Below, piece by piece: positions 19,622 to 46,498 of a stretch of 64,000 nt of DNA. The notes below the pieces were generated by a model. The model had not been told where the DNA came from. It made no database searches and saw only the letters and a program-made list of their open reading frames with translations. A program made the position numbers and the translations under genes. How positions within the stretch are numbered: position 1 is the stretch's first letter; the number at the start of each line of letters is the position of its first letter. The DNA lies in IMG/VR virus record IMGVR_UViG_3300027834_000005, positions 186,001 to 250,000 of that record; one strand, 5' to 3'.

Positions 19622-19627
19622 ATTTTT

Positions 19628-19703: not shown

Positions 19704-19709
19704 ATTTAT

Positions 19710-19801
19710 GTATCAGAGCAAGTATGGACGTCCATACACTGTGCTGTCTCAAGTCGTCAAGTCATGGGATCGGGTGGTTCAATACCACTGGTGATGCGCC
19801 A
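19710..19801 (+). ncRNA. tRNA-like RNA / degenerate tRNA
   Basis: GTATCA/TGATGC stem, T-arm GTGG TTCAATA CCAC, GCCA end, non-canonical middle. Confidence 0.4.
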
Positions 19802-19807
19802 ATTTAT

Positions 19808-19886
19808 CGGGATATAGCTCAGTCTGGTGTAGAGCGCATGCTTTGGAAGCTTGAGGCCGTAGGTTCGAATCCTACTATCCCGACCA
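19808..19886 (+). tRNA. tRNA-Pro(TGG)
   Basis: CGGGATA acceptor, TTTGGAA loop. Confidence 0.9.
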
Positions 19887-19892
19887 ATTTAA

Positions 19893-19971
19893 CGGAATGT
19901 AACTCAGTCTGGTTTAGAGTGACGGTCTTGGATACCGTTGGCCACTGGTTCGAATCCAGTCATTCCGACCA
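19893..19971 (+). tRNA. tRNA-Pro(TGG)
   Basis: ACGGT CTTGGAT ACCGT. Confidence 0.9.
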
Positions 19972-20269
19972 ATTAGTTGTTGACGTCAACATTAAAAAGC
20001 GTTAGAATACGTCCCTTAGAGGATATTAATATGGATTGTAAGCAGATATGTCATAACATCAGATATAACCACATATATGAGGATGAAGATGGTAATCCCG
20101 TGGATGGTTATGCAAAAGGACATAGGATCGTATCTAGTGAGCCGTATTGTACTGTTTACCAAAACGAGAAAATGAAGCGTAACGGCGATGAAGTTGTTCC
20201 GTTAGCAAAATGTAAAGCCGATGATTATGCTGAGACAATCGTGTTTTATTATGACGGTAAGATGATGGT

Positions 20270-22021
20270 ATGAGATTTGAAGATTTAGCCAGACAGCCAA
20301 TGCGCCACGGTGATGAAAGCGTAAATTATATGTTAGTATATCATGGAGATGAAACATGGGTTCCTAGATTTAAAAGTGGTGCTATAATGACCATTGAGGC
20401 AAATCACGTTGATTATTGGAGTTCTAGTGTAACTCTCTTTAAGTATGAATGTAACGGCGTACCTGCCGATATAAGATGTGCGTCTACGGAAGATCGGTTT
20501 GTAGTTACGACTAAAATGAAAAAAGATATAGTAAGTAGCGTATACGTAAAGTGTTTTTACCCGTTAGATGTAGGCAGTCCGTTTTATAGTGATGAAGATT
20601 TATTTGAAGCCAAGTTATCTGGCGACTATGAAGCGATAAGAAAGACTTTGAGAAAAGAATTTAATGCTTGGAAAAAGGTGAACTAAGTGAAATTTGAAGA
20701 CTTAGCTAATATTAAAATGTGTGACGTCGATACTAATGTGCAGTACCTTTGTGCATACAACTCTAGTTACACTATGTCAAGTAAGCCATGTACATTAAAT
20801 CCCATGGCCATAGATGATTTTTGGTCTCAATATGTATTTGAAAAGGCGCATAAAAATGGCAGTAACTACTCACTTGGCCAAAACGGAAGATTAGTAATAA
20901 CTACTAAGATGAAAACTGAAAACCTTAATGAGCATGGTTATACCTTTTTAAATGGACACTATGTAACGTGTTTTTATCCAATAGTTGCTGATAGTCCTTA
21001 CTATAGTAATGAAGAATTATTCGAAGCTAAATTAACAGATAACTTTGTGCCGTTAATTAAGAAATTACGTAAAGCTTTTTATCATTGGAAAAAGGTGAAC
21101 TAAGTGAAATTTGAAGTATTAGCAAAGACGGAAATGGTACGTGCCGATGAGAGTGTTGATTATATCCTCGTGTACCATTCAAGTGATAAATGGTATCCGA
21201 CCACATATAAAAGAGGGACGATAGTAAAACTATCAACTACTACTGATATATATGCATCGCCATATACGTTTACTCACGTAGTTGAGCCAGACATTATCCA
21301 TACTATATCTGGTCGTAGCCACTCAGATAGATTGATAGTGACTACTAAGATGAAGCGTAGAGTTAGAAATAATATTGGGTGGAGGACATTAGATGAAGAA
21401 TCGGTTAAATGTTTTTATCCTTTAGTTGCTGATAGTCCTTATTATACTGATGAAGATTTGTTTGCCGCTAAGATCAGTAATGATTATGATGTAGTGTTTA
21501 AGAAGTTAAGAAAAGCGTTCAATGATTGGAAAAAAATTAATTGACAACGACCTTAAACTCTTATATTATATTATCTCTTTCAAGAGGTGCACGTTATGGA
21601 CTTTGCAGAATTAGCGGATATAAGAATCAGAAACGCTGACACTATATTGAAGTATATGGTAGTGTATGATTCAGTATGGCAAGAAGGCCGAGACAAGAAT
21701 ATGCCTGATGGTGACGTCGGCACAATCACTAGAACTATAGCCAAGCATACCAACTCGGAAATGTTGACTATTAGTGCCAAGGGATTGAAACATAGCATGC
21801 TTATACCCTCCGTCGTAGACTCATTGGTCGTAACGGCCAAGATTAAAAAAGAACGTAGGGGTGAATATCTGGATGTATCTGCCAAGTGCATATATCCATT
21901 AGTAGAAGGAAGTCCTTACTACGAGGATGAAGAGCTATTTGAGGCCAAGTTGTCCGGTGACTATCGTAAGTTGTACAAGAAGTTAAGAAAAGCATTTAAT
22001 GCTTGGAAGAAAGAAAACTAA
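20270..22021 (+). repeat. Tandem array of four paralogous ~140 aa genes (20270, 20687, 21104, 21587)
   Basis: Shared MxFEDLA start, VTTKMK, KCFYPL..SPYYxDEELFEAKLSGDY..LRKAFNxWKK; variable middles. Confidence 0.85.
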
Positions 22022-22348
22022 TATGATTAATGTATACAGTAGAAGGCATATTAGATCTGACGCAACGCCACATGAAGTTATTGATGCGTACGTTAGTAAG
22101 ATTACCGGATACAAGTGTCTTCTGCTTAAACCACGTGATGGACCTAAATGTGGTATGTACCTTGAGACTCTGTATCAGTTTAACAAGAAAGAAGATATAG
22201 ATGGTATATATGATGCTATAGTAGAACAAGATGAAGAAGCGTTGATGTTCTATGAGTTATCAACGTAGTATAGAATTCTAACGCTGACGTTGTGTTGAGT
22301 GTTACATAGAAAAATTTGTCCTCTATGTGTAAAAGGAAAAGGTTCCAA

Positions 22349-22424
22349 GGGTCTCGACGCATATTGGTACGCGGACGGATTGTGATTCCGTTGGAACTCG
22401 GTTCGAAACCGAGGTGACCCTCCA
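22349..22424 (+). tRNA. tRNA-His(GTG)
   Basis: ACGGA TTGTGAT TCCGT; A-1:U73 instead of G-1:C73. Confidence 0.85.
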
Positions 22425-22440
22425 AATTTAAAGAGTATAG

Positions 22441-22827
22441 GTGATTAAAATGTTTTATGGAGAATTCGATACGTGGGATAATGTATTGTCCCAGTTTGGC
22501 GTAGAAAAGTCGGAAGTTTCCAATGCGGTGCCTATATTTGCAGCATATGATATAGACGGGTATGAAGGAACTGCTTCGGTTGTTTATGTTGAAGATGGAA
22601 AGTTCTGGTTAGTTGACGGATCACATTGTTCTTGCTACGGCTTAGAAGATCAGTGGGAACCTGAAGAGACTCCTTATGAAGTATTGGAGCACTTGGCAGA
22701 AAAAGGAAACTACATGTTCTCTGTGTACAAAAAAGAGTTCATGGCGACGATTAATTTTATTAAGGAAAGCGGTTTCGACAACGTTGACCCTAAAGAATTA
22801 GAATTTGTATTAAAATTATCATTGTGA
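22441..22827 (+). CDS. Hypothetical phage protein
   Basis: 128 aa ORF with GSHCSCYGLEDQWEPE motif. Confidence 0.65.
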   Translation: MIKMFYGEFDTWDNVLSQFGVEKSEVSNAVPIFAAYDIDGYEGTASVVYVEDGKFWLVDGSHCSCYGLEDQWEPEETPYEVLEHLAEKGNYMFSVYKKEFMATINFIKESGFDNVDPKELEFVLKLSL

Positions 22828-22931
22828 TAAAAAATTAAAAATAGGAAGGTAAGATATGAAATCAGGCAAACTTATCGTCTTATAGGATACCCTAATGTGT
22901 TGGTGATCCCGTAAGACGTAAAACAACTTAC

Positions 22932-23007
22932 GGGGTGGTAGCTCAGCGGCCAGAGCAGTTGGCTTTTAACCAATTCGTCGAGGGTTCGAATCCCTCTCGC
23001 CCCACCA
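22932..23007 (+). tRNA. tRNA-Lys(TTT)
   Basis: GTTGG CTTTTAA CCAAT. Confidence 0.95.
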
Positions 23008-23018
23008 AACACACATTA

Positions 23019-23094
23019 GGGATATTAGCTCATCAGGTAGAGCAACTGGCTTTTAACCAGTAGGTGCTCGGTTCGAGACCGAGATATCCCACCA
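23019..23094 (+). tRNA. tRNA-Lys(TTT)
   Basis: ACTGG CTTTTAA CCAGT. Confidence 0.95.
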
Positions 23095-23095
23095 A

Positions 23096-23172
23096 GGGAC
23101 GTTAGCTCACGTTGGTAGAGCAGGGAGCTTTTAACTCTCTGGTAGTCGGATCGTCACCGACACGTCCCACCA
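23096..23172 (+). tRNA. tRNA-Lys(TTT)
   Basis: GGGAG CTTTTAA CTCTC. Confidence 0.9.
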
Positions 23173-23655
23173 AATTTTATTTGACAGCGTCATTAATTCA
23201 TGAGATTATATAGACTCTAAAGATTGGGAGAAGATCATGAACGGATCGTACTGGTAAAATTGTATGAGAAAGACTCAAGCAAATCCATGGGCAGCGTCTG
23301 CGTACAGAGAGCGTGTGGAGAACGGTAGACCTACTGGTGTCATTGTTAAGGATTTCGTAGCTTATCCTAATTGTGAAACCTTTGACTGGAAACATATTGA
23401 GGAGATCACCAAGTGAACACTTTAGAAAACGTGATAGCATATCAAGAGAAAGTCCGCGATACGTTCGGTATAGAAAGCAATTGCGACGTAGGGCAATCGT
23501 ATAAAGAGTTGGGTGAGAAATACGCATATGTATTAGACGTCACCGAAGAAGAAAAGTTACAAGTAAACCATGCCGTATTTGTAGACGGAGTGGTAATAGA
23601 ATTTAAAGCACTTAACCCAAGTATCTGGGAAGAAGTGAATATTTAAAAAGTTTAC

Positions 23656-23729
23656 AGCGCGTTGACAGAGAGGCTATGTGGTCGGCTGCAACCCTTCATA
23701 CGCCGGTTCGAATCCGGCACGCGCTTCCA
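23656..23729 (+). tRNA. tRNA-Cys(GCA)
   Basis: CTGCAAC loop, U73, weak anticodon stem. Confidence 0.8.
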
Positions 23730-23737
23730 ATTTTAAT

Positions 23738-23816
23738 TGCGGTTTTAGTTAGGTCAGGTGACCTTCCGAGGCTCATAACCTCTGGGTGATGCGTTCGATA
23801 CGCGACTCCGCTACCA
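23738..23816 (+). tRNA. tRNA-Met(CAT), degenerate initiator-like
   Basis: GAGG CTCATAA CCTC; mismatched acceptor. Confidence 0.55.
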
Positions 23817-23821
23817 TTTTT

Positions 23822-23893
23822 ACCTCTGGGACATAGGATGTCAGACGGATTCCAAACCCGTCTTACTGGGATCGTTACCTAGCAGGGGTGCCA
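23822..23893 (+). tRNA. tRNA-Trp(CCA)
   Basis: ACGGA TTCCAAA CCCGT; short D-arm; GCCA. Confidence 0.8.
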
Positions 23894-25150
23894 AACACTA
23901 AGGATATACCCATGAACGTTTTAACTATGACAGCAGTTACTAGTCGTTCGTTCGGCACGCAAGACGGGAACCTTATCGAAGAAAAAGAAACGTACCACAT
24001 ACATCCTTACACTGAAAGAAAAGGATTTGATCAGATGTACGGTATACTCGATGAAGACTACGAACATGTAGTCACTGTGTTGTTTCGATCATTATGCGTT
24101 ATATTCGGCGAAGAAGAAATATTTACTAAAGTGCTACTCGGTGAATTGGAACCTAATGTAAATCATGCATAATTCATATAAAGCCGCTAGAGAAGTAGGC
24201 ATGAACTCATTCACGTGCGTATGCACTAAGCCTACTAGATTCTTTTCTTTGAGTCCGTTAAGGGTAATAAAAAAAGATTGTATTTATTTCATTAAGCCTA
24301 GTATTCCTTTTCAGATTGACCTACCAGAGCCGGTAGTGTACGCAGTAGGCGTATTAGAAAAGATACATGGTGACCCAGACAGAAAGTTTTTTAAAGTGTT
24401 ATGTGAAGTGGATTACCAAGGTTTATTAAAAGTGTTTGATGAAGAAGATATATTTCAGCAAGTACTACTCGGTAACGTAGTAGCGGAGTGAGATATGATT
24501 ACAAAAAGAAACGGTTTTTTCATTAAGCGTTGCGCTGATTGTAGTGAAGAGTTATCGCCTACTGAGTATTTTTTCTGTCATGACTGTGAAGAGTGGCATC
24601 GACGGGCGGAAGAGATGGCTATGGAAGCTGACTTCGGCGATGAAGATGATACGTAAGTAGACTTTAATATAAATGTCTGGTATAATTAATGTGTAAAGTG
24701 ATAATCGGTAGGTAAAAAGTATGTGTGATGTTTCTAGTACTATTGAGAGCACTGTTATTCAGTGTGGCGATATTTCATTACAGGACATGGTTGCGATTGT
24801 CGTGGCTGGTTATGTGAATGAAAAAGAAGAAACTTATAGAGGCAGTAATCGCGCCGACGAATATAAAAAAGACGAGTTCTATAGATGCTTATCTAGTCTA
24901 AGTGCCACAATCAGTGACGGGCCAGACTTCGGTGGGCTGGATCGAGTTGTGCATTATCGCGCAGTAGTTGATATTGGACCTCGATTCAGAAGCTTCTTAA
25001 AAATATGTGAAGACATGAACGTGATTGTGACTGTTGATCCACTACGTATGTTAGATCTTACAGTATTGGATCGTAAGATACAGAAGTTCAATGAGTGGGC
25101 AGGCAAGGCAATCCTGACACAAGTACAAGAAGACTATAAGTAAGAACAAC

Positions 25151-25226
25151 GCTGTTGTAGCTCCAAAGGTAGAGCGCGTCTTTGGTAAAGACGAGGTTGC
25201 TGGTTCAAGCCCAGCCTTCAGCACCA
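25151..25226 (+). tRNA. tRNA-Thr(GGT)
   Basis: CGTCT TTGGTAA AGACG. Confidence 0.9.
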
Positions 25227-25230
25227 AATT

Positions 25231-25304
25231 GCGGTATTAGCTCAGAGGCAGAGCGTTGGGCTTCCACCCCATGTGCAGGATTTCGAAATTCCTATACCGC
25301 TCCA
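25231..25304 (+). tRNA. tRNA-Gly(TCC)
   Basis: TGGG CTTCCAC CCCA, TCCA. Confidence 0.85.
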
Positions 25305-25467
25305 AAATTACATTGGCATACTCTTAGCGTTAAAACTGGGCGGACAAATATACGCTTTGCCTAAAGAGACGATATGTAATATACTGTGCCTCGGACGGTT
25401 CCTAGAGGATAAAACACAAGGGTTATTAAGCGTAATTGCAGTCCCTAATTGGAGCCACCATTTTTAT

Positions 25468-25544
25468 GCGGTATTAGCTCACGTTGGTAGAGCACCGGCT
25501 TGCCAAGTCGGAGGTAGTGGGATCGTCACCCACATACCGCTCCA
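25468..25544 (+). tRNA. tRNA-Gly(GCC)
   Basis: CCGGC TTGCCAA GTCGG. Confidence 0.95.
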
Positions 25545-31830: not shown

Positions 31831-32703
31831 ATGAAAACAAATAGCATACGAGTACGTTTAGATCAAGATCACGTCCATGTCACCAGTAAGGTGTTTAGTG
31901 GCGGCGAGATTCATGTCGATATCGATAGTCTTCCGGCTAAATGTCATGATTATACGATCAAAGCGCGTTTACAAAGCAGCGAAGACATTATGCACTTCCT
32001 TACTCTCTGTGATGCTATGTGGCGTCGTTATCCAGAGGCCCATGGAAAGGTAACCATTCCGTATTTGCCATATGCAAGACAAGATCGCATGTGTTCTAAA
32101 GGACAGCATTTCGGTTTACATGTCATGTCCCAATTATTATCTACTATACCACAAAAAACAATCACTACCTATGACCTTCATAGTAAAGTGGCGTCATCTT
32201 TGTTAGCGGAAGACGGTTTTGGTGTAATAGACATCCAGCAATATGATATCTTAATGAAGCATAGCTTAGGCGAAGACCTTGCAGACGGACGATTACGTCT
32301 AGTGTCACCGGATAAGGGCGCTAAGGATAAAACTGCACAGGTAAGTTCATTTTGTAACAGTAAAATGTCTACCATCGTGGGCGGTAAGACCAGAGATCCT
32401 AAGACTGGTAAGATTACCGAGTTCACAGTTGATGAAGATGACCTATGCGGTCAAGATTTACTCATTGTTGACGATATTTGTGATGGTGGCGGCACATTCA
32501 TTGGTCTTGCTGATGAATTGAAGAAACGTGGAGCTGGAGAAATCAGCTTATTCGTAACACACGGAATCTTCTCTAGAGGGTTCGACGGATTCTCTGGGCT
32601 TATTGATCATATCTATACGACTGACTCGTTCCGACGTAGTTCAGATTTACCATTTAATGGCGTAGTGGCGGAGAATGTAACTCTGACCACTATTAAGGTG
32701 TAG
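31831..32703 (+). CDS. prs: Ribose-phosphate pyrophosphokinase-like protein (Adps of NARP1-like pathway)
   Basis: FSGGE, PYLPYARQDR, DLHS, SPDKGA, LIVDDICDGGGTF, VTHGIFS motifs. Confidence 0.9.
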   Translation: MKTNSIRVRLDQDHVHVTSKVFSGGEIHVDIDSLPAKCHDYTIKARLQSSEDIMHFLTLCDAMWRRYPEAHGKVTIPYLPYARQDRMCSKGQHFGLHVMSQLLSTIPQKTITTYDLHSKVASSLLAEDGFGVIDIQQYDILMKHSLGEDLADGRLRLVSPDKGAKDKTAQVSSFCNSKMSTIVGGKTRDPKTGKITEFTVDEDDLCGQDLLIVDDICDGGGTFIGLADELKKRGAGEISLFVTHGIFSRGFDGFSGLIDHIYTTDSFRRSSDLPFNGVVAENVTLTTIKV

Positions 32704-32827
32704 TTATGGCTATGTTACGACGGGTTAAAGTGTTTATGGCGTCATATTGTGGTTGGGGTTGTGCCAGTTACAATCCTTTATGTGATGCTTGTGATGCTAC
32801 TAGAAACGATAATTAAAGGAGACTACC

Positions 32828-34495
32828 ATGACGGTACGATTACTAACAAAACCAGCATTTGAAGAAAAAGAGATTATCCAAGCACCCGCTTTATTGGATT
32901 TTTATAAAGCATTCCATCATCTTGCCTATCAAGACGGTGTGGAAGAGGTTGTTATCAACTTCACGGGTCGCAGCGGTAACCACAGTAACATCAAAGGCGG
33001 ATCTACGTACATGTGGGCCGGTCTTCAATCATTTATCAATGAAATCATTGTAGGTGAATGGAATAAGTTCTTTGCGGCAACTAAAGAACAGGCAGTAGCT
33101 GATTATAAGCGTGTTAATGAAGCCGGTTTAGGCGTAGTATGCGATACTAGCCATCTTGAAGCACTACATGACCTTGGATATATGCCTTTAGAGTTTAGAG
33201 GTCTATTGGAAGGGGTAGAAGTGCCATACGGCGTGGCAGCAATGACTTGCCGCAACACAATTGCCGAGTTTTACTTCCTACCGAACATGATTGAGACTAT
33301 CATGTCTGATGAAATCTGGCCAGTTCAGACTTCATTGACTACTGCGACTGAGTACATGCGTACTTTGAGTGAATTTGCCGCAATCGATGGTACTCCAGAA
33401 GGGTTACTTGGGTTCCTTATCCATGATTTCTCTATGCGCGGCATGATGGGTGGCAGAATGACAGGTGGTGCTGCATTATCTGGCATGGGACACTTGATGT
33501 CTGGCTTTGTAGGAAGCGACACAGTGCCTGCTGCATTGGCTCTGGAGAAGAACTACGGCGCTTACCTAGGCTTAGATCGTCCTTACGAAACAATCGCCTC
33601 AGTGAACGCTACGGAGCACAGTGTGCAGTGTTCTTTCAATAACAATGACTTGGCTTACTACCGTCACTGTATGAAAGTATCGCCTACTGGCATCCTTAGC
33701 TTAGTATCTGACGGTTATGACTTCTGGAAGCTTATTGCTGAAGTATTACCGGCACTTAAAAACGAGATTATGTCTCGTGACGGTAAAATCGTTATCCGTC
33801 CAGATAGCGGTGACCCAGCAGACGTGATTTGTGGTCTTCGTGAGAATATTGACTACCGTCGTACCAAAGATGGTAAGGCATACGCGATGAAATACTGGAA
33901 AGGTAGCGCCTTTATGGGTGCTGAGCAGACCGAATACGGTAAAGTAGTTAAAGAAGCAGCTCCTACTATCCCTGATATGGAAGTGAAAGGTTTAATTCAA
34001 GTATTATGGGAAATGTTTGGTGGTACTGAGTCTGGTGTTGTTGGCGGTAAGGTCTATAAGTTCTTAGACTCTCATATCGGCGCGATTTACGGCGATTCTA
34101 TCACTCTTGAGCGTCAACGTGACATTTATACACGTTTACACGCAAAAGGCTTCGCGGTAGGTAACATTGTATTGGGTGTTGGTTCTTTTACTTACCAATA
34201 TGTTACTCGTGATACTCATGGGTCTGCTGTTAAAGCGACTAATATGATTTTGAAAGGCGTAGATACTCCTATCAGCAAAGAAGTTAAGGGTGATGCGGTT
34301 AAAAAGTCTGCGAAAGGTCGTTTAGTTGTTAAGCGTATCGATAATAAGTACGTTCAATTCGATGAAGCTACTCCTGCGGGTGTTGAGGCTGACGATAATC
34401 AGCACCAACGAGTATGGATGGACGGTGAATGGATCAGAATCCAAACACTTAAGGACGTTCGTACTAATGTTAAGGAAACTTTAGAACCAGCTTGA
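32828..34495 (+). CDS. nadV: Nicotinamide phosphoribosyltransferase-like protein (Nampt/Namat)
   Basis: DFYK..H, HDFSMRG, GSDT, ATEHS, VSDGYD, IRPDSGDP, IYGDSIT, KKSAKG motifs. Confidence 0.92.
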   Translation: MTVRLLTKPAFEEKEIIQAPALLDFYKAFHHLAYQDGVEEVVINFTGRSGNHSNIKGGSTYMWAGLQSFINEIIVGEWNKFFAATKEQAVADYKRVNEAGLGVVCDTSHLEALHDLGYMPLEFRGLLEGVEVPYGVAAMTCRNTIAEFYFLPNMIETIMSDEIWPVQTSLTTATEYMRTLSEFAAIDGTPEGLLGFLIHDFSMRGMMGGRMTGGAALSGMGHLMSGFVGSDTVPAALALEKNYGAYLGLDRPYETIASVNATEHSVQCSFNNNDLAYYRHCMKVSPTGILSLVSDGYDFWKLIAEVLPALKNEIMSRDGKIVIRPDSGDPADVICGLRENIDYRRTKDGKAYAMKYWKGSAFMGAEQTEYGKVVKEAAPTIPDMEVKGLIQVLWEMFGGTESGVVGGKVYKFLDSHIGAIYGDSITLERQRDIYTRLHAKGFAVGNIVLGVGSFTYQYVTRDTHGSAVKATNMILKGVDTPISKEVKGDAVKKSAKGRLVVKRIDNKYVQFDEATPAGVEADDNQHQRVWMDGEWIRIQTLKDVRTNVKETLEPA

Positions 34496-38057: not shown

Positions 38058-38516
38058 ATGTCAATAGCAACTAAGCAAGTTGTAGTGGTGAGAACCGATG
38101 TGTTCTCTAAAAAAAATGAACAAGGAAAGATGGAATTAGATCCATCTCTCATTGGTAAAATTGGCATTCAAATGACACATGCTTCCAAGGCAGTCATACT
38201 CAATCAATTGAGGGATTCCAAATGGGTCCTCGTTAATAACATCCCCCGCACACTCGAACTTGCTGGTAAACCTGAAGAAGATCCAGTGTACCAATGGTGC
38301 ACGGGACCATTCACAGGCATAGCTCTTAAATGTAAAAGTGAAGTTAAACTCCAAAAACTTTACGACGAAGCTATAGCTGCCGGTCTACCATGTTCATACA
38401 TTGTGGATAGAGGGCTAACAGTATTCAATGGTGTGCCAACTGCTACGTGCATGGCTATTGGCCCAGCGAAATCCGAAGACATCGATAAAATTACTGGTAA
38501 GTTGAGATTGCTATGA
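38058..38516 (+). CDS. pth2: Peptidyl-tRNA hydrolase, Pth2 family
   Basis: KQVVVVRTD, GKI..Q..HA, DRGLT, TCMAIGP..IDKITGKLRLL. Confidence 0.9.
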   Translation: MSIATKQVVVVRTDVFSKKNEQGKMELDPSLIGKIGIQMTHASKAVILNQLRDSKWVLVNNIPRTLELAGKPEEDPVYQWCTGPFTGIALKCKSEVKLQKLYDEAIAAGLPCSYIVDRGLTVFNGVPTATCMAIGPAKSEDIDKITGKLRLL

Positions 38517-38872
38517 TTTCTATTTTTGGCAAAGATCCTTACCGTTATGTTGATAACTTTGAGCTAGCTAGTACTGCGTGCGCTAAATTACTCGCAACGA
38601 CCTCTCGCAACCATGGGTGGGTTATTGATTTCAATAAAAGCGTTACTGACTGCCTTAATGAAGATTGTTCAGTTAATGATTTATTAGTTGAAGGGTATGC
38701 TGTGCCAGTAGATAGCATTATGAATCTTATGCACAAGCACAACATAGGCATCCATCCTTTAGGCAATAACAAATGGAAAGCTGTGCACGAATCTACCCAT
38801 GTCGAATACAAAGATAGAGATCCTGACAGAGCAGTTCTAATTGTTTTTGCAGAGATAACTGGCGGTGTATAA
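38513..38872 (+). CDS. NinX/DUF2591-like hypothetical protein
   Basis: LMHKHNIGI..W.A..PDRAVLIVF pattern. Confidence 0.35.
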   Translation: MISIFGKDPYRYVDNFELASTACAKLLATTSRNHGWVIDFNKSVTDCLNEDCSVNDLLVEGYAVPVDSIMNLMHKHNIGIHPLGNNKWKAVHESTHVEYKDRDPDRAVLIVFAEITGGV

Positions 38873-39244
38873 TGATTAAAATAGGCATGGTATTCAAAAA
38901 TACTACGTATTCACCAATGCTTGATGTGGACGAAAATGCGCACCTCTTTATTTCTGACATCTATCATAGTGATGTTCATGGTGAGAAAGTAATTTGGTTC
39001 ACTAATGAGCACGGAAAGAGACTTGGTTATTTTAGATACGAAGCTCTTGTCATTGCCCTTGATGATGACGGTAACTTGGATAGTTTATCCTCGGATTTCT
39101 ACGCGTTCAAATACATAGGTACATTAACAGATGAAGACATGTTCCAATATCATTTATCTGGTAAAATATGCATTTAGGATATTAGTGGACAACAAGTTAA
39201 ACTTCACATATACTATATCACTTACATAAATCAACGGAGTAAAC

Positions 39245-40669
39245 ATGAATATTAATTCAATTCATAATTCTAACGAAAAAACAGACACTATCGTCATTCT
39301 GGTAGATTCATCATACGTCGGCGACAAGATCATTGCGGCTCTTATTGAGAGCAAAGATTTCAAAGTGGAAACGGCAGGAACTACACATTTAACTGTAGAA
39401 ACTTCCGAAGACGATGTTTTACAGAAAACATTATACGTGGCTACTGGTTCGTTAGATGAATTCAATGAATCCACAGGTAATATCGACGTAGTGGCTAAAT
39501 CTATTGTCGCGTATCTTAAAGGTTCACCATCTGACATATTAACAGTGGCTGCAGAAAACAATGCAGTACGCGATTGTGGCCTTGAAGCTTTATGTTCATC
39601 ATTGGTCATTGCTGACTATAACTTTTCCCTAGAAGATAAGCCATCGCCGCTTACTATCAATATTTTGTTTGATGACGAAGCAAGCGCTACTCAGGCAGGC
39701 CCTTCAGTGAGTGATGGGGTAGATGCCGGTAATGCAATCAATTATACGCGTCGTTTAGGTGACCTACCAAGTAATGTCTGTACACCTACATACATGGCGC
39801 GTCAGGCGGTGTCCCAATTCAAGCAAGATAATGTGCGTGTTAGTGTCATTGGCGAAAGTGAAGCAAAAGAGCTTAACATGGGCGGTTTCATGAGTGTTAC
39901 TCAGGGTTCCGATGAAGAAGGCAAAATCATCATCTTCGAATATACCGGCGATGCGAATAACTCAGATACGGTTGCGTTAGTTGGTAAAGCGGTTACATTT
40001 GACAGCGGTGGTATCAGTATTAAGCCAAGTGCATCAATGGAAGAAATGAAATATGACATGTGTGGCGGTGCTACGGTATTTGGTGTGATTAAAGCTGCGG
40101 CTGATATGCAATTGCCTGTTAACCTTATTGGTGTCGTAGGCGCGGTAGAAAATATGCCATCTGGCAACGCTACTCGTCCAGGTGATATCATCAATATGAT
40201 GTCCGGTAAAACTGTTGAAGTTACTAATACGGATGCCGAAGGTCGTATGGTGCTGGCTGATCTTTTAACCTATGTTGGTGAAAATTATAAGCCTACTACG
40301 GTTCTAGATTTAGCAACGTTAACTGGTGCGTGCTGCGTAGCTTTAGGTGAACATGCCGCTGGTATCTTTACTGAAGATGATGCTCTGGCCACAAGCCTAT
40401 ACGATTCTGGTCAGAAAGTGAATGACCGTGTGTGGCGCTTACCAATGTGGGAAGACTACAACAAGCAAATGGATAGTGATTTTGCAGACATGGGTAACTC
40501 AGGTAAACGTGGTGCCGGTGCTAGTACAGCTGCGTGCTTCCTTAACCGTTTTGCTAGCGACTACGACTACAAATGGGCACATATTGACATTGCTGGCGTA
40601 GCGTGGAAAGGTAAAGCTACTGGTCGTCCTGTTAAGATGTTGCTTGACTACTTGACTACGGGTAAGTAA
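39245..40669 (+). CDS. pepA: Leucyl aminopeptidase (M17)
   Basis: VGKAVTFDSGG, MKYDMCGG, ENMPSG, NTDAEGR, DLATLTGA, WAHIDIAG. Confidence 0.95.
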   Translation: MNINSIHNSNEKTDTIVILVDSSYVGDKIIAALIESKDFKVETAGTTHLTVETSEDDVLQKTLYVATGSLDEFNESTGNIDVVAKSIVAYLKGSPSDILTVAAENNAVRDCGLEALCSSLVIADYNFSLEDKPSPLTINILFDDEASATQAGPSVSDGVDAGNAINYTRRLGDLPSNVCTPTYMARQAVSQFKQDNVRVSVIGESEAKELNMGGFMSVTQGSDEEGKIIIFEYTGDANNSDTVALVGKAVTFDSGGISIKPSASMEEMKYDMCGGATVFGVIKAAADMQLPVNLIGVVGAVENMPSGNATRPGDIINMMSGKTVEVTNTDAEGRMVLADLLTYVGENYKPTTVLDLATLTGACCVALGEHAAGIFTEDDALATSLYDSGQKVNDRVWRLPMWEDYNKQMDSDFADMGNSGKRGAGASTAACFLNRFASDYDYKWAHIDIAGVAWKGKATGRPVKMLLDYLTTGK

Positions 40670-40670
40670 T

Positions 40671-42261
40671 ATGAGCCTCATGGATTTTACGAATTTCATG
40701 GGGCTAATAGAGACATATCTTATTGAGTATTTTGGGCATGCGTGGTGGGCATTTTTTCCCGCCATTCTGGTCATGATAGGAATGTTCTTTATTAGACTTC
40801 GATGTACGTATTTGTATTACGTAGAGACAGGCGAGTGGTTTCATGAGTCCAACTACAATAACAGTGAGACTTTTAATATATGGACTGCGAATCTGCCAAT
40901 AGGATTTATGCATATATTGTTCTCAGGGGTATTCACGGTCATAGCTCTTGTTTTTATAGCGATCATGTTACAGTTTCCTGTTGTGTTGGTTAGTATAATT
41001 ATTTTTGTTTTATCGACGTGGGGATTCTTTTATGTTTGCGCACGAGGAAGAAATAAAAAGTTGTTTCACGATAAATTGAGTGGTGAAGATGATGGAAATG
41101 ATTGAACTGTTTTTAATAACTCACGTAGGTAAAGGGTGGGCGTTTTTAATCCCATGGTATATGTTTATAACGTGCATGGTAGTGTGGCGTTTCAAAATTA
41201 CTCATGATTACTATGTTAAGTGCGGTGAATGGCATGACGCTTGTGATTTATTGCACGAGTTTACCGATATTAGAACAGCTAACATCTTTACCGGAATACT
41301 ACATGTAATGTTAGGGAGTATAGCTTTCATTCTTACTGCTGCGTTCTTAAAAATGTTATATACTAACCCTCCTGTGTTTTTCACTATGGCGGTGACATTC
41401 ATAGTGTTGTCATTGTTCGCTATGCTTTGTAAGCGTAATAGAAATAAATTATTATTTGTTGAAAAATTAAGCGGGAGATAACCATGGACAATTTTACTCT
41501 TTATATGGTAGATGCGTTAGGAAAAGATTGGTACGCATTACTAGGTTTATGGTTTGGTTTTGCCATTGGTATTATTATTAGATTAGTAGTGACCTATCAT
41601 AATTTCGTAAAGGACGGTGAGTGGTTTAGTGGCGCGGACGACGGCACAAATCTGCGCACGAATAACCAATTTCTAGGGTTTGTGCATGTGATATGCGTAG
41701 GATTGGTATCTATGGCGCTAGTTTCCATAATCCACTCATTCATAATGTATCCAATGGCACTTTTAGTTACTGGCTCAGTTATACTGTTCATGGTGTTATA
41801 TGTGCTAATGTGTTTGCGCGAGAGGAAGAGGCAACTGTTTGAAGATTCTTTAAAAGGTAAGGTGGGCTAATATGGAAATCTCACATGAAGTAGGAGTAAT
41901 GATAATAACAGTGCCAGCATCAATTGTGCTAGTTCTATTAATCATTAACAGAATACGTGTACATTTTAATAATTTCGTCAATGACGGTGAGTGGTTCATG
42001 AGTGAACATGACGATCTCGAAAATATTTATAATGTATTTAACAGTAGAGATACCTTCACTGGAACATTTTTTACTATAGTTATTCCTTTCGGTGTTTTTC
42101 TGATGGGCATAGCCGTGTTGTTACTATTGCGGTTTCCTATTGTCATGGGTTGCGTGTTAGGCGGAGGTGTCATAGTAGCGTTGTTTATGTGCGCATTAGT
42201 ATACTTTGGTAAACGAGAAAGAAACAAGAAGTTGTTCGAAGATAAATTGCGCGGCAAATAG
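40671..42261 (+). repeat. Four tandem paralogous membrane proteins (40671, 41080, 41484, 41872)
   Basis: Each has TM helices, a GEW(F/H) motif and a C-terminal K(K/L/RQ)LFxxxLxG. Confidence 0.8.
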
Positions 42262-42540
42262 GAAGGTATCTGATGAAGGCGTATGATTGTTTTGGGTCTA
42301 AATGTAATGGGTGTGCAGAGTACGCCGAGTATTGCAACTGCGAGATAGATAGTAATGGCAATCTTATCGATCCACAACCTATCGTATGTCCGTTTTGCGG
42401 AATCAAACCCGACATGGGCGGCAGAATGCTATCTAGAGACCAAAAAAGTACAGCCCAGATAGTTAGTCACCAAGACACTGGGAAATGTTCTCTTGATATG
42501 CTCGTGTTTAGACTTCCAGAATGGAATACTAGGCATTCAC

Positions 42541-42762
42541 ATGATTGAGATAGATTTTCATGGATGGCTTCCTGCTGCTGCCGAAGATAAGATCCATTCG
42601 ATGATAGGCGAAGCCAGACACGTAGGTGTCCCTACCCATATCAAGTTCATAACTGGGAATGGTAAAATAAAACAGATTGTTATTGATATAGCCAATACTT
42701 ATGGTGTTCACTGTCAAGAGCAACTAGGAAATAGAGGCGCTTTAATAGCGTTAATAGAATGA
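42541..42762 (+). CDS. Stand-alone Smr-domain protein
   Basis: IDFHG, FITGNG, N.GALIA motifs. Confidence 0.75.
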   Translation: MIEIDFHGWLPAAAEDKIHSMIGEARHVGVPTHIKFITGNGKIKQIVIDIANTYGVHCQEQLGNRGALIALIE

Positions 42763-43325
42763 AAGAATCAGAAGAGATACCAAAGCACGACAATTATTTA
42801 GTATTTGATTTAGAAGCTACTTGTTGCAATAAAGACAGTTTGGATCGTGACTCTATGGAAATCATAGAGATAGGCGCGGTTATGGTTGACGGTAAAACTT
42901 TCGAAATAATAGATGAGTTCTGTACATTTATTAAGCCGGTGAGAAATCCAACTCTCACTCCGTTTTGCAAAAGGTTGACGACAATCACACAGATAGAAGT
43001 TGACACTGCGCCAGAATATAAAGAAGCATTAGAATTATTCAAAAACTGGTACGCTGGTTACGAAGATGTGCTAATATGTTCTTGGGGTAACTATGACAAG
43101 AAACAATTTTCGCAAGATTCTCGTTTCCATGGTGTTGAGTCCCCAACAGCGGATAACCACTGTAATATGAAAAGAATATTCTCATTAGTGAAAGGTGTAA
43201 AAAGACGCTTCGGCGTTAAGAATGCCCTTCTTGAACTGGGGATGGAATTTGACGGTACTGCCCATCGCGGAATAGATGACGCTAGAAATACAGCGAGGTT
43301 GGCAAAGTACACATTTGGTGACTAG
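42759..43325 (+). CDS. ERI1/KapD-like DEDDh 3'-5' exonuclease
   Basis: FDLEATC, EIIEIGAV, LTTITQ, SWGNYD, HRGIDDARN. Confidence 0.9.
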   Translation: MKESEEIPKHDNYLVFDLEATCCNKDSLDRDSMEIIEIGAVMVDGKTFEIIDEFCTFIKPVRNPTLTPFCKRLTTITQIEVDTAPEYKEALELFKNWYAGYEDVLICSWGNYDKKQFSQDSRFHGVESPTADNHCNMKRIFSLVKGVKRRFGVKNALLELGMEFDGTAHRGIDDARNTARLAKYTFGD

Positions 43326-43759
43326 ATATGTCGTACAAGAAAAACGAAATTCACCCGTGGACAGTGATAGGAATGACGCTCACTATGCCCATTATGCTAT
43401 CTGTTATCGTGACAGGAAGTAATATATTACTGCATTTATGGGCGGTACTTGGGATGGTCACCGTTCTGGCATACGGCGTGTGTAGTAGGAAGTATATAGG
43501 GAAAGAACCATATAACGCAGAAGCGGACATCACAGTGGCGTTTAGTGTTATTTTCGTATGTTATATGTGTGGGCCAGCTTTTGGGTGCCAATTTTTCTAT
43601 GATAACCGCATGGAATTTAAGTCATACGCCAGAATAGCTAACAGGGGATATATATTCCCTACCAAAAAGAATAAAGAAATACATTTCCTAAAAAGATTAA
43701 ATGGGGAATTAAAAGAATAAACATTTGCATGTGATATGAAATGTATGTTATAATGCTCA

Positions 43760-44090
43760 GCATGAAAAGAATTTTTCTCTATAATAAGAGAAATGAAAGA
43801 ATAACTGTATGAAACTAGGATGAGCAAGGAGACACGCGGGTTCGACTCCCGCCGCTTCCACCAAAGTGATATTAAACGTGAAGTTTTTTGGATCTGTTAT
43901 GGGGGCGTTTTGGATTCGACCTTCTTGTGATTTGAGGTGGACAGTTCGGCAAATGTGAAAGTCGTTAAGAGAAACCCTTTTGGGTAAACTCTCATAGAAA
44001 CACTAAATATAATTGCTAATGAAGAATTATACGCTCAAGCTGCCTAATCGCGCTTGATGAGGTTAGAGTCACCTTATTATCCAACGACAC
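43760..44090 (+). ncRNA. ssrA: Two-piece (circularly permuted) tmRNA; tag (A)ANEELYAQAA*
   Basis: 3' TLD piece GCGGGTTCGACTCCCGCCGCTTCCACCA ends at 43863; 5' piece GGGGGCG..GGATTCGAC starts at 43901; tag ORF 44015-44047; terminator hairpin 44093-44117. Confidence 0.9.
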
Positions 44091-44130
44091 ACGAATGGGG
44101 ACTTAATGTCCCCATTCACTTATCAGGGAT

Positions 44131-44481
44131 TTGATAATGGACAAGCACGGCCCAGTTTTAATTAATATGATACGTAGAACAGTACCGAAATTGATAGCGG
44201 AAGATCTAGTGGGTGTACAGCCTATGATATCACCTATTGCCCGATGGGAAAAATATCATGTAGTTTGGGTAATCACGACAAGCGGTGAGTTGGTATGTAA
44301 TGGCGATGTGTATATGCTAGCGAATTACGTCAACGACAAATTCACATGTAACCTAGGTGAAGTGCTAAGCGAAGAAGAGTATTTCCTAAGAGAGCTTGAT
44401 GGCTCCAATAAAGAATTAGATAATATTACTGACGTAGGTAAGGTTTTTTCCCTAAAGACTAGATATAACAGAAACATATAG
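44131..44481 (+). CDS. Small protein carrying a T4 gp23 Gol-region-like segment
   Basis: PVLINMIRRTVPKLIAEDLVGVQPMISP ... GKVFSLKTRY. Confidence 0.65.
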   Translation: MIMDKHGPVLINMIRRTVPKLIAEDLVGVQPMISPIARWEKYHVVWVITTSGELVCNGDVYMLANYVNDKFTCNLGEVLSEEEYFLRELDGSNKELDNITDVGKVFSLKTRYNRNI

Positions 44482-44534
44482 TCACACATAATATGGCATC
44501 TCTGACTCATAAATAGAGGACAAGGAGATGTAAT

Positions 44535-45413
44535 ATGAAAGATAGTTATATATTAAACTGTGGTCCTAGTGATAAGAACGGGACCGATTGGGTATATCCA
44601 GTAGGCGCTGCGCCTTCCGAGTTACCAGAGAATTTTTCTAGAAGAAAATTTACCAGAAACGTATCCAATCAAGGAACCGTAGGTTCGTGTGTAGGCCAAA
44701 CATTAAGCGTGGTATTTAATGATACTACCCAATGTGAGTCAGTTAGTCTTTCTCCTATGTGGATATATAAGAGAGCAAAAAGGCATGACTATTGGGCAGG
44801 CGAAGATTACTCCGGCACGTCCATCTCAGGGGCCTGTTTGGCGCTTAAGAAGGAAGGCGCGTGTAAGGAGGAGTTCTATCCTTATCATGGCTCTACGGAG
44901 GATTACGAGCCTCTGACGGGTGCTATAGCTGACGCAGATAGAAGAAAGGTAATAGCGTTTTATAATTTGGCTGTTCACAGAATAGACGAGATAAAGAATC
45001 TATTACTCAAAGAATCACTGGCTTGTTCCATTGCCGTACATTCTGGATTCTATGCCGCTAAAGATGATGGGATAGTTGTTGAAGCAGGGTACGAAGCGAG
45101 TAAGTATCAAGGCGGTCATGCAATGGCCATAGTCGGATGGAAAGTTATAGACGGTATACTACATTGGGAATTCCAGAATTCATGGGGTGATAATTGGGGA
45201 GACGATGGTTTCTGTTTCATTCCTCATACGTTATTAGAGAATATAAAATCGTCTAACGTGTATTATCTAGTGACTGAAAATGAAGACAATGTTAGAATTG
45301 AAAAAGAGAAAAGAAAACGTAGTAAGTTAATGAGTATAATCGCGTATGTGCCGGAGCTGTTAGTTGAAGGCATGAGGTACTGCATTACTTATATAAAGAA
45401 TAAGTTTTCATAA
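44535..45413 (+). CDS. Papain-family (C1) cysteine peptidase
   Basis: NQGTVGSCVG, GGHAMAIVGW, QNSWGDNWGDDG. Confidence 0.9.
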   Translation: MKDSYILNCGPSDKNGTDWVYPVGAAPSELPENFSRRKFTRNVSNQGTVGSCVGQTLSVVFNDTTQCESVSLSPMWIYKRAKRHDYWAGEDYSGTSISGACLALKKEGACKEEFYPYHGSTEDYEPLTGAIADADRRKVIAFYNLAVHRIDEIKNLLLKESLACSIAVHSGFYAAKDDGIVVEAGYEASKYQGGHAMAIVGWKVIDGILHWEFQNSWGDNWGDDGFCFIPHTLLENIKSSNVYYLVTENEDNVRIEKEKRKRSKLMSIIAYVPELLVEGMRYCITYIKNKFS

Positions 45414-45498
45414 AGGTGCGGGGAGTCATGCTCCCCATAACATACCTTAATTATTTTATACCGATAAATACATATAACAAAACAAACATAAAGATATT

Positions 45499-45855
45499 AT
45501 GAGACTATTAGAATTTAACACAACAGATCCGCAAGGTCTGCTACAGAAAGTAGCCAATGACATCAAGACAGCTGAACGTAGAGATTGTCATGGTACGTGT
45601 GCGGCTGCGATTCGAACAGGTCAAGTGGAAGATGAAGATGTTGTGGTTATCGTTGGACCCAAAGGTAATGGCGGGAAGCACGGATTCCATTCAGTTATAA
45701 TTGATAGTACAGGCAACATAAAAGTAGATTCATATAGTGAACATATGACAAACTACGACAAAGAAAATGGCATATTTTATTACGACATAGGCGGGAAAGA
45801 AGTCCCAATGTCGTATAAATCGTTTGCCAAAGTAGGCAAGCTCAAAAACGCGTAA
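45499..45855 (+). CDS. Late protein (MRLLEF start), possible Cys-His-Asp fold
   Basis: GATAAATA upstream; DCHGTC..HSVI..VDS. Confidence 0.4.
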   Translation: MRLLEFNTTDPQGLLQKVANDIKTAERRDCHGTCAAAIRTGQVEDEDVVVIVGPKGNGGKHGFHSVIIDSTGNIKVDSYSEHMTNYDKENGIFYYDIGGKEVPMSYKSFAKVGKLKNA

Positions 45856-45878
45856 GCAAGTAAAAACTAGCAAACGTT

Positions 45879-45907
45879 AAAAAAGGAGACAATGTCTCCT
45901 TTTTTTA
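45879..45907. terminator. Bidirectional intrinsic terminator
   Basis: AAAAAAGGAGAC AAT GTCTCCTTTTTTT. Confidence 0.8.
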
Positions 45908-45946
45908 TACCCGTAATTATGGTATACTACACAGAAGAGGTTCATT

Positions 45947-46498
45947 ATGAAAAGGTTCAAAGAGAAAAAAATAGATTTTGAGGCATTGAAGCAATATATC
46001 AAAGACTCTAGTGAGAGTTCTGGTGTGTATATCGGTGGAGACTCAAAAACATTCAAGCATGACGGTGAGAGATACTGTGCATATTGCATTTCTGTAATTG
46101 TACATAAAGACTCTAAGCATGGCGGTAAAGGTTTCTATCATGAGATCATCGAAAGGGACTATGGCGACATTAAAGCCCCTAGAGCAAGACTTATGAATGA
46201 AGTGTATAAGGTAGTTGACGTTGCTAATGAGCTTGTAGAGTATATTGGCGATAGAAAGTTCGAAATACATTTGGACATCAATGCTTCTGAGAAGTATAAG
46301 TCTAATACAGCTATGAATGAGGCCTGTGGTCTTGTTAAAGGTGTATTTGGTGTTGAGCCAAAGATTAAGCCAGAGGCATGGGCTGCATCGACTATTTCTG
46401 ATAAATATGCTGTGAGAACTGCAAAAAGTTCAAAAAACACAGTTAAAAAGAAGAAGGCTACCAATCGTGAAAATAGAACAAGTGCTAAACGAAAATAG
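45947..46498 (+). CDS. RNase H-like protein (YkuK/DUF458 family)
   Basis: YIGGDS, RLMNEV, EIHLDIN, IKPEAWAAS..D. Confidence 0.75.
   Translation: MKRFKEKKIDFEALKQYIKDSSESSGVYIGGDSKTFKHDGERYCAYCISVIVHKDSKHGGKGFYHEIIERDYGDIKAPRARLMNEVYKVVDVANELVEYIGDRKFEIHLDINASEKYKSNTAMNEACGLVKGVFGVEPKIKPEAWAASTISDKYAVRTAKSSKNTVKKKKATNRENRTSAKRK

What the first reader, a model, noticed from the sequence alone, without database searches (positions are those of the whole stretch)
44131..44481. Stand-alone mimic of the capsid Gol peptide next to tmRNA
Seen: PVLINMIRRTVPKLIAEDLVGVQPMISP matches the T4 gp23 segment AVMGMVRRAIPNLIAFDICGVQPMNSPTG. The following gp23-like stretch (GKVFSLKTRY) resumes after an insert that carries the EEExF tag. 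Established: this Gol region binds EF-Tu and triggers the Lit protease. Inference: a decoy for capsid-sensing defences, an EF-Tu modulator, or a capsid-assembly regulator.
Basis: partly seen in the sequence, partly recalled or inferred. Interest (0 to 1): 0.68.

Follow-up and report, generated by a model that had tools for sequence, protein, structure and literature searches.

The report
Stand-alone capsid "Gol" peptide gene in huge phage
A 114-residue gene of an uncultivated ~350 kb phage carries, at its start, a copy of the most conserved 25 residues of the T4-type major capsid protein (the Gol peptide, which binds elongation factor Tu in T4); the gene is conserved and under selection, many other small phage proteins carry the same module on unrelated tails, and its function is still untested.

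Summary
The gene at window 44137-44481 (+) encodes 114 aa. Residues 5-36 match T4 gp23 residues 92-123 (17/32 identical; Pfam Gp23 E 2e-9, but only profile positions 3-35 of 376). The C-terminal VGKVFSLKTRY matches the gp23 strand that follows Gol. Between them lie 67 residues that gp23 does not have. A permuted tmRNA gene ends 19 nt upstream.

It is not a decayed capsid fragment. Seven diverged small homologues exist. Three relatives are collinear with the window and keep the ORF intact at about 40% identity. One homologue pair gives dN/dS 0.20.

The module is portable. Of the 120 best short hits to the family profile, 48 carry it at their N terminus. Conservation starts and stops sharply at T4 positions 93-117. 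The tails fall into 15 groups with no BLAST similarity between them. Related loci also hold small proteins built on the gp23 spine-helix segment.

The tmRNA adjacency holds in one clade only. Function is untested. My best guess (about 0.35) is a flexible docking peptide for the partner that recognises Gol in trans, and EF-Tu is the only such partner shown by experiment. Capsid assembly and immune-decoy readings remain open. A co-fold with E. coli EF-Tu gave no verdict.

The parts
43760..44118 (+). Permuted (two-piece) tmRNA gene, tag peptide ANEELYAQAA; immediate upstream neighbour on the same strand
   Evidence: Rfam RF01850 85.5 bits and RF04321 81.6 bits; ARAGORN 43770-44138. A tmRNA lies 0-600 bp upstream of the homologous gene in L007/L008, L019 and L020.
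44125..44129 (+). Shine-Dalgarno-like AGGGA, 7 nt before the ATG
   Evidence: Read from the sequence. The homologues have comparable purine-rich sites, for example AGGAG in L019.
44137..44481 (+). Gene for the 114-aa small protein (P0001), stop codon included
   Evidence: ORF list. Called as 114 aa on five public contigs of the same phage. Homologues P0002, P0003, P0004, P0006, P0007, P0008 and P0010. dN/dS 0.20 for the P0003/P0006 pair.
44149..44235 (+). Gol-like module, residues 5-33, equivalent to T4 gp23 92-120; the conserved core is residues 6-30 (T4 93-117)
   Evidence: BLASTP 17/32 identical; Pfam and PHROG hits. R13, P17, A21, G26, Q28, P29 and M30 are invariant in 35 small proteins. 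Conservation has sharp boundaries at T4 positions 93 and 117.
44236..44436 (+). 67-residue region absent from gp23 (residues 34-100): predicted beta hairpin 36-62 and helix 79-87, which contains SEEEYF
   Evidence: AlphaFold2 model, low confidence, mean pLDDT 56. Conserved in P0002, P0007, P0003 and P0006. dN/dS 0.17 outside the module in the P0003/P0006 pair. No Pfam or PHROG family.
44437..44466 (+). C-terminal gp23-like strand GKVFSLKTRY (residues 101-110), equivalent to T4 gp23 122-131
   Evidence: 18.8 bits against the capsid-derived matrix, top of 23,224 window positions; BLAST E 0.2. Partly kept in P0002 and P0007.

Best explanation
The gene encodes an expressed small accessory protein, maintained by selection, of a huge T4-related phage. 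It is not a capsid subunit. About 43 residues derive from the major capsid protein: the 25-residue Gol core plus the next beta strand. A lineage-specific 67-residue region lies between the two pieces. I propose that the Gol core is an autonomous, flexible docking peptide. It presents to a trans partner the same surface that nascent gp23 presents. The only partner shown by experiment is EF-Tu (domains II/III, GDP form). On this view the protein docks on host EF-Tu. It then either occupies the Gol site, which would blunt Lit-type capsid-triggered suicide proteases, or tunes EF-Tu use during infection. Shown here: the homology, the module boundaries, conservation, selection, the accessory-gene context, and reuse of the module on unrelated tails. 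Inferred: binding to EF-Tu and any consequence of it.
For: The module is homologous to T4 gp23 92-123. In 49 small proteins conservation is at least 3 bits at most of T4-equivalent positions 93-117 (99-100% identity at R100, P104, G113, Q115 and P116) and falls to 1.6 bits or less just outside. In capsid proteins it stays at roughly 2-4 bits across the flanks (87-92 and 118-131). That window lies inside the 29-residue peptide that defines Gol function. Gol binds EF-Tu domains II/III and is noted as the most conserved part of gp23 (review PMC3014915). The module sits 3-24 residues from the N terminus and is joined to 15 tail types with no BLAST similarity between them, as expected of a self-sufficient peptide ligand. 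In the better AlphaFold2 model (relative P0033) the tail folds confidently (pLDDT 77-93) and the module does not (about 50). The genes lie among early or accessory-type genes, not head genes: a PTH2 / M17 peptidase / RNase T / tmRNA block here, arrays of small genes elsewhere, between nrdA and nrdB, and between two endonuclease genes in phage X1. Selection: dN/dS 0.20, and the ORF is intact in three collinear relatives at about 40% identity.
Against: There is no direct evidence of binding. The co-fold with E. coli EF-Tu plus GDP scored 0.00, which the tool says is neither for nor against. The module may be conserved in capsid proteins for assembly reasons: T4 residues 66-105 probably contact the scaffold, and the length mutants A94V and G97S map there (PMC9546572). 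Sibling small proteins carry a different gp23 segment, the spine helix. That points to capsid mimicry in general rather than to EF-Tu. In T4 a Gol peptide alone activates Lit, so a plain mimic should trigger that defence rather than block it. The conservation profile comes from sequences selected with a profile that contains the module, which is an ascertainment bias. The tmRNA/PTH2 link to translation is confined to one clade.
Confidence: 0.35

Rival explanations
1. Head-assembly factor or prohead-targeted cargo. The module copies the part of the capsid protein that contacts the scaffolding core or neighbouring subunits. The small protein would therefore bind scaffold or capsid protein. It could regulate nucleation or head length, or it could be carried into the prohead in the way an N-terminal capsid-targeting sequence works.
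For: T4 gp23 residues 66-105 are flexible in the unexpanded head, point inward and probably contact gp22. The length mutants A94V and G97S lie in the module, and after expansion the region makes intercapsomer contacts (PMC9546572). The module is always near the N terminus. Small proteins carrying the gp23 spine-helix segment co-occur, and in L012 one directly follows the Gol-type gene. The window protein also keeps the next gp23 strand. The phage has T4-type morphogenesis genes (gp15-like).
Against: None of the genes examined lies in a head-gene cluster. Conservation stops at position 117, although the adjoining strand is as conserved as the module in real capsid proteins. The diversity of tails and the several copies per genome look like accessory genes rather than core assembly genes.
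Confidence: 0.2
2. Decoy for capsid-sensing immunity that does not involve EF-Tu. Small early proteins display the most conserved capsid epitopes (Gol core, spine helix) to titrate or jam host sensors that recognise unassembled capsid protein.
For: Two different conserved gp23 segments are displayed on small proteins. In the relatives many copies sit in arrays of fast-evolving small paralogues typical of counter-defence regions. Distribution is patchy: full-length tblastn searches with three of these small proteins matched only capsid genes in 50,697 cultured phage records, and the Xanthomonas phage X1/BUDD pair came to light only through a second motif hit.
Against: No sensor of this epitope other than Lit/EF-Tu is known to me. 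A faithful mimic would be expected to activate an abortive-infection sensor rather than silence it. No defence or counter-defence gene was identified next to the window gene.
Confidence: 0.15
3. Dedicated partner of the phage tmRNA, for example a factor that helps load or deliver the two-piece tmRNA with EF-Tu during trans-translation.
For: The gene starts 19 nt after the tmRNA. A permuted tmRNA lies 0-600 bp upstream on the same strand in four lineages (window, L007/L008, L019, L020) whose proteins are only 36-41% identical. PTH2 is directly upstream in L012. EF-Tu delivers tmRNA to the ribosome (established knowledge).
Against: The window, L007/L008 and L019 are collinear over the whole region, so their adjacency is shared ancestry. 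P0010 sits between the nrdA and nrdB genes. Broader family members have no tRNA or tmRNA within 8 kb. There is no SmpB-like or RNA-binding family hit.
Confidence: 0.05
4. Neutral remnant of a duplicated capsid gene with no function of its own.
For: About 43 residues are clearly capsid-derived. In L012 a Gol-type ORF and a spine-helix ORF lie side by side in capsid order, as pieces of a broken copy would.
Against: The ORF is intact in three collinear relatives at about 40% identity while neighbouring proteins range from 26 to 76%. dN/dS is 0.20 overall and 0.17 in the part not derived from the capsid protein. All homologues examined have ribosome-binding sites. The module is found on at least 15 different tails.
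Confidence: 0.05

Closest known systems
Gol region of T4 major capsid protein gp23 (the Gol-Lit-EF-Tu exclusion system)
   Same: Homologous sequence: window residues 5-36 match gp23 92-123 with 17/32 identical. The conserved core in the small proteins (T4 93-117) lies inside the 29-residue peptide that defines Gol function (PMC3014915).
   Different: Here the segment is the N terminus of a free 114-aa protein rather than an internal part of a 521-aa capsid precursor. It is followed by a 67-residue region that gp23 lacks. EF-Tu binding and Lit activation are untested.
Pfam PF07068 Gp23 / PHROG 138 major head proteins of T4-like phages (including RaK2 and cyanophage capsid proteins)
   Same: The HMM score is above the curated cut-off, and the N-arm helix, the GVQPM motif and the first strand are shared.
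   Different: Only profile positions 3-35 of 376 are matched. There is no P or A domain and no propeptide, and the gene is not in the head-gene cluster. It cannot form an HK97-type shell subunit.
Small phage proteins ending in F.L[RK]W[S/A] (uncharacterised multigene family seen in L013, L015 and L017), some with an N-terminal Gol module
   Same: Same N-terminal Gol module and similar size. A short resemblance exists around LSEEEYFLREL versus [IV]SEELLxWLxLRWS.
   Different: The window protein lacks the terminal motif, and profile-profile comparison of the tails is not significant (probability 0.4%). With confidence, only the module is shared.
N-terminal capsid-targeting sequences of the T4 internal proteins (from my own knowledge, not tested)
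   Same: A short N-terminal peptide on small proteins that could direct them to the scaffold or prohead.
   Different: No sequence relation. Packaging of the window protein has not been examined.

Membership tests
Major capsid protein, Pfam PF07068 (Gp23) | HMM score above the gathering cut-off | tested here: met
   37.6 bits against 24.4, E 2.2e-9, but the match covers only 33 residues.
Major capsid protein, Pfam PF07068 (Gp23) | Full HK97-type body (spine helix, P and A domains), about 350-520 aa | tested here: not met
   114 aa. Only profile positions 3-35 of 376 align. tblastn with T4 gp23 and the RaK2 capsid protein finds nothing else in the window.
Major capsid protein, Pfam PF07068 (Gp23) | Located in the head-morphogenesis cluster (portal, scaffold, protease) | tested here: not met
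   The neighbours are PTH2, an M17 peptidase, RNase T, the tmRNA, a C1 peptidase and an RNase H-like gene.
Gol peptide (functional element of T4 gp23) | Sequence homology to gp23 94-122 | tested here: met
   17/32 identical, E 2e-10. Every position that is invariant in capsid proteins is kept.
Gol peptide (functional element of T4 gp23) | Binds EF-Tu domains II/III | tested here: inconclusive
   The co-fold with E. coli EF-Tu plus GDP scored ipSAE 0.00. The tool states this is no evidence either way.
Gol peptide (functional element of T4 gp23) | Activates Lit cleavage of EF-Tu at Gly59-Ile60 | not testable with these tools
   Needs a biochemical or in vivo assay.
Small-protein family ending in F.L[RK]W[S/A] | C-terminal F.F...D...F.L[RK]W[S/A] motif | tested here: not met
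   None of 135 plus-strand window ORFs ends this way. P0001 ends in ...KTRYNRNI.
Small-protein family ending in F.L[RK]W[S/A] | Profile-profile similarity of the tail | tested here: not met
   hhalign A5 against A6 gives probability 0.4%, and A5 against A7 gives 0.4%. As a positive control, A6 against A7 gives 47%, E 2e-4.
SmpB (protein partner of tmRNA) | SmpB family HMM match | tested here: not met
   No such hit at E up to 1 in Pfam.
Pseudogene or decayed capsid fragment | No conservation and relaxed selection | tested here: not met
   Homologues are found in at least 6 lineages. dN/dS is 0.20. The ORF is intact in the collinear relatives.

The most novel reading that the evidence does not exclude
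The Gol core is a portable peptide ligand. T4-related and huge phages graft it repeatedly, and likewise the capsid spine-helix segment, onto unrelated small domains. This would make a class of capsid-epitope display proteins that act in trans on the host: by docking on EF-Tu, by jamming immune sensors that read unassembled capsid protein, or both. On this reading the Gol-EF-Tu contact is a function the phage itself selects for, not merely a liability that Lit exploits.
Probability: 0.2. Interest if true: 0.85.

Novelty: new variant of a known kind. Interest (0 to 1): 0.62.

Why it matters
Why T4-type capsid proteins conserve the Gol segment, and why it binds EF-Tu, has been open since the Lit work. 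The usual view is that the host simply exploits an assembly constraint. Finding the same 25 residues, with sharp boundaries, on many otherwise unrelated small proteins says the segment works as a unit outside the capsid fold. That makes the question testable with small soluble proteins. One example sits in cultured Xanthomonas phages. If the proteins bind EF-Tu or block capsid-triggered suicide systems, they would be a new kind of phage host-takeover or counter-defence factor. If they enter proheads, they would reveal a capsid-derived targeting signal.

Tried and rejected
- **DNA searches:** megablast of window 43000-46000 against 50,697 phage records found nothing. blastn of the module against E. 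coli genomes found nothing.
- **Word-indexed protein search and viral-contig scans with the single protein:** these returned only the same phage. The 20 kb around the gene are 100% identical in the ENA and JGI contigs, so those copies give no divergence information.
- **Co-fold with E. coli EF-Tu plus GDP:** no verdict, ipSAE 0.00, controls not run. This is not evidence either way.
- **AlphaFold2 of the window protein:** mean pLDDT 56, too weak for a fold search.
- **Fold searches with the better model of relative P0033:** Foldseek against PDB gave nothing at E 0.001 or better. BFVD gave only uncharacterised proteins of uncultured phages. VIA-align wide gave a best Z of 4.3, which is generic.
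- **Homology of the window protein's tail to the F.L[RK]W[S/A] domain:** not supported by hhalign.
- **The phage's own capsid gene:** not in the window and not in the 10 kb to its left. I therefore could not compare the module with the phage's own capsid protein.
- **T4 late-promoter motif TATAAATA:** absent within 3 kb upstream of all ten genes checked. It is also nearly absent from a 40 kb stretch of phage X1 that includes structural genes, so the test is uninformative. The sigma-70 and terminator scan showed nothing above the shuffle expectation.
- **Terminase Walker-A likeness in two paralogues of the small-gene arrays:** not significant, E 4.5.
- **Literature:** the held library has no description of stand-alone Gol-like proteins. 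The original Lit/Gol papers are not held, so I could not map the 13 residues reported as important for Gol activity.

Full report
**1. What is there**

The maximal ORF runs from 44131 to 44481. The likely start is ATG 44137: AGGGA lies 7 nt upstream, and gene callers on five public contigs also report 114 aa.

Residues 5-36 align with T4 gp23 residues 92-123, 17/32 identical, E 2e-10 pairwise. Pfam Gp23 scores 37.6 bits (cut-off 24.4), but over profile positions 3-35 of 376 only. PHROG 138 'major head protein' agrees. tblastn hits the same short segment in the capsid genes of 2552 phage records.

The last residues, VGKVFSLKTRY, align with gp23 122-134, which is exactly where the first alignment stops. 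BLAST alone gives E 0.2. A position matrix built from 49 capsid-protein fragments gives 18.8 bits. That is the best of 23,224 positions in all window ORFs, and no other position reaches 8 bits.

The protein is therefore gp23(92-120), then 67 residues that gp23 lacks (34-100), then gp23(122-131). A permuted tmRNA, above the Rfam gathering scores, ends at 44118, 19 nt before the ATG.

**2. Which genome**

The same 20 kb is 100% identical on contigs of 347,153 bp (ENA) and 410,284 bp (JGI), and the identical gene lies on a 347,232 bp IMG/VR contig. The window carries 35 tRNA genes. A T4 gp15-like gene lies just to its left. This is an uncultivated huge phage with T4-type morphogenesis genes. Its own capsid gene is not in the window or in the 10 kb to the left.

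**3. Not a decayed fragment**

- An exhaustive phmmer search of 1.8 billion representatives found three small homologues of 100-121 aa. A profile search added four more.
- Loci L007/L008 (P0002) and L019 (P0007) are collinear with the window over the whole region. Neighbouring proteins are 26-76% identical, and this gene is intact at about 40%.
- The closer pair P0003/P0006 gives dN 0.105, dS 0.526 and dN/dS 0.20. The ratio is 0.27 in the module and 0.17 in the rest.
- All homologues have purine-rich ribosome-binding sites, and several overlap the stop codon of the preceding gene.

**4. The tmRNA link**

A permuted tmRNA lies on the same strand 0-600 bp upstream in the window, L007/L008, L019 and L020. 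L011 begins with the tRNA-Gly gene that follows the tmRNA in L020, so the contig is probably cut there. In L012 the gene directly follows PTH2.

However, three of these loci are simply collinear. P0010 lies between the two ribonucleotide reductase subunit genes. Six loci of the wider group have no tRNA or tmRNA at all. The adjacency is real, but it is best read as synteny within one clade.

**5. The module is portable**

The family profile found 774 short proteins (63-200 aa). Of the 120 listed:

- 72 look like N-terminal pieces of true capsid proteins on short contigs.
- 48 carry the motif 3-24 residues from their own N terminus. The three looked up on long contigs (P0033, P0014, P0021) are complete genes flanked by other small genes.

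In these small proteins conservation switches on at T4-equivalent position 93 and off after 117, with 98-100% identity at P97, R100, P104, A108 and G113-M117. In capsid proteins it continues on both sides. Caveat: the sequences were retrieved with a profile that contains the module.

The regions after the module fall into 15 clusters with no BLASTP link at E 1e-3. The window protein clusters with P0002, P0003, P0006 and P0007.

Full-length tblastn searches with three of the small proteins (P0001, P0021, P0033) matched only capsid genes in the 50,697 cultured phage records. Following up a second motif hit in one record then showed that Xanthomonas phages X1 and BUDD encode a 72-aa hypothetical protein with the module, lying between two endonuclease genes.

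**6. Related observations in the relatives**

In L013, L015 and L017, 20 of 61, 15 of 43 and 5 of 48 plus-strand ORFs end in F.L[RK]W[S/A]. This paralogous family has no Pfam or PHROG entry. Several Gol-type proteins belong to it (hhalign A6 against A7, E 2e-4).

AlphaFold2 of one member, P0033, gives a confident small alpha/beta tail (pLDDT 77-93) and an unstructured module (about 50). The tail has no informative structural relative.

Other small proteins carry a different gp23 segment, the end of the E-loop plus the spine helix:

- L015:11906-12226 matches Pfam Gp23 positions 142-203, E 7e-10.
- L012:784-1050 matches positions 148-188, directly after the Gol-type gene.
- A profile of these finds 26 clusters.

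The tail of the window protein could not be tied to the F.L[RK]W[S/A] domain.

**7. Mechanism**

From the literature:

- A 29-residue gp23 peptide defines Gol. It binds EF-Tu domains II/III, prefers the GDP form, and allows Lit to cut EF-Tu. It is the most conserved part of gp23 (PMC3014915).
- In T4 proheads residues 66-105 are flexible and probably touch the scaffold. The head-length mutations A94V and G97S lie there. After expansion the region makes contacts between capsomers (PMC9546572).

The module has sharp boundaries, an N-terminal position, many unrelated tails, and accessory-gene contexts. From these I infer a self-sufficient peptide that meets a partner in trans.

EF-Tu is the only trans partner shown by experiment, so docking on EF-Tu is my leading model (0.35). 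Two possible outcomes follow: blocking Lit-type sensing, or tuning translation. The spine-helix siblings and the scaffold data keep an assembly or prohead-targeting role (0.2) and an EF-Tu-independent decoy role (0.15) in play. A tmRNA-specific role (0.05) and a neutral remnant (0.05) are unlikely. The single co-fold with EF-Tu gave no verdict.

**8. Comparison and novelty**

The protein passes the Pfam Gp23 threshold, yet it fails the features that make a capsid protein: body domains, length and gene context. It shares sequence with the Gol element, but Gol's defining activities are untested. I found no description of stand-alone Gol-like proteins in the held literature. I rate it a new variant of a known kind, namely the known Gol/N-arm segment in a new free-standing and recurrent architecture. 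Interest is moderate to high because it makes the long-open question of what Gol is for directly testable.

Noticed in passing
L013 1754-10882; L015 5381-12709; L017 6317-8309: Large arrays of co-directional small genes, often with overlapping stop and start codons, whose products end in F.F...D...F.L[RK]W[S/A]: 20 of 61, 15 of 43 and 5 of 48 ORFs. None of the ten members scanned has a significant Pfam or PHROG family. AlphaFold2 gives a confident small beta-beta-alpha-beta-beta-alpha domain with no informative PDB relative.
   Followed up: partly
L015:11906-12226; L012:784-1050; L013:10613-10882: Small proteins that carry the gp23 spine-helix segment (Pfam Gp23 positions 142-203) rather than the Gol segment. 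One ends in ...FILRWSSD. In L012 it directly follows the Gol-type gene. A profile search finds 26 clusters, mostly 103-113 aa.
   Followed up: partly
L022 26646-26864 (Xanthomonas phage X1, OQ427096.1 57562-57780); BUDD ON758385.1 31459-31665: A cultured phage encodes a 72-aa hypothetical protein with a Gol-like module (residues about 19-44) between two endonuclease genes. It is 54% identical between the two phages and offers an experimental handle.
   Followed up: partly
window 44535-45413 (+): A papain-family (Peptidase_C1, E 4e-15) cysteine protease gene directly follows the Gol-like gene. It is absent at this position in the collinear relatives L007/L008 and L019, which have an unrelated 115-aa ORF instead.
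   Followed up: partly
window 7278-25544 and 38058-43325: 35 tRNA genes lie in about 18 kb. A separate block holds peptidyl-tRNA hydrolase PTH2, an M17 aminopeptidase and an RNase T-like exonuclease just before the tmRNA. The block is conserved in the relatives.
   Followed up: partly
window 18233-18324 (+): ARAGORN reports a 92-nt tRNA-Ile with anticodon TAT, unusually long for this tRNA type. It may have an insertion or intron, or be a miscall.
   Followed up: no
window 31831-34495 (+): Ribose-phosphate pyrophosphokinase and nicotinamide phosphoribosyltransferase genes lie side by side (PHROG 619 and 448), an NAD-salvage pair.
   Followed up: no
L011 145-966 (-): A DUF559 endonuclease gene on the opposite strand sits between the tRNA-Gly gene and the 91-aa ORF that precedes the Gol-like gene. 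It is absent in the close relative L020 and is probably a mobile insertion.
   Followed up: no
L013:9683-10120; L015:5925-6329: Two paralogues of the F.L[RK]W[S/A] family share an N-terminal part with a G-x-x-T-G-K-S motif. BLAST aligns it to the Walker A site of T4 terminase gp17, but not significantly (E 4.5).
   Followed up: partly
public contigs of this phage (L001-L003): The same phage appears as contigs of 347,153, 347,232 and 410,284 bp in three collections, with 20 kb 100% identical in the ENA and JGI copies compared. The longer contig may contain a terminal repeat or a concatemer junction.
   Followed up: no
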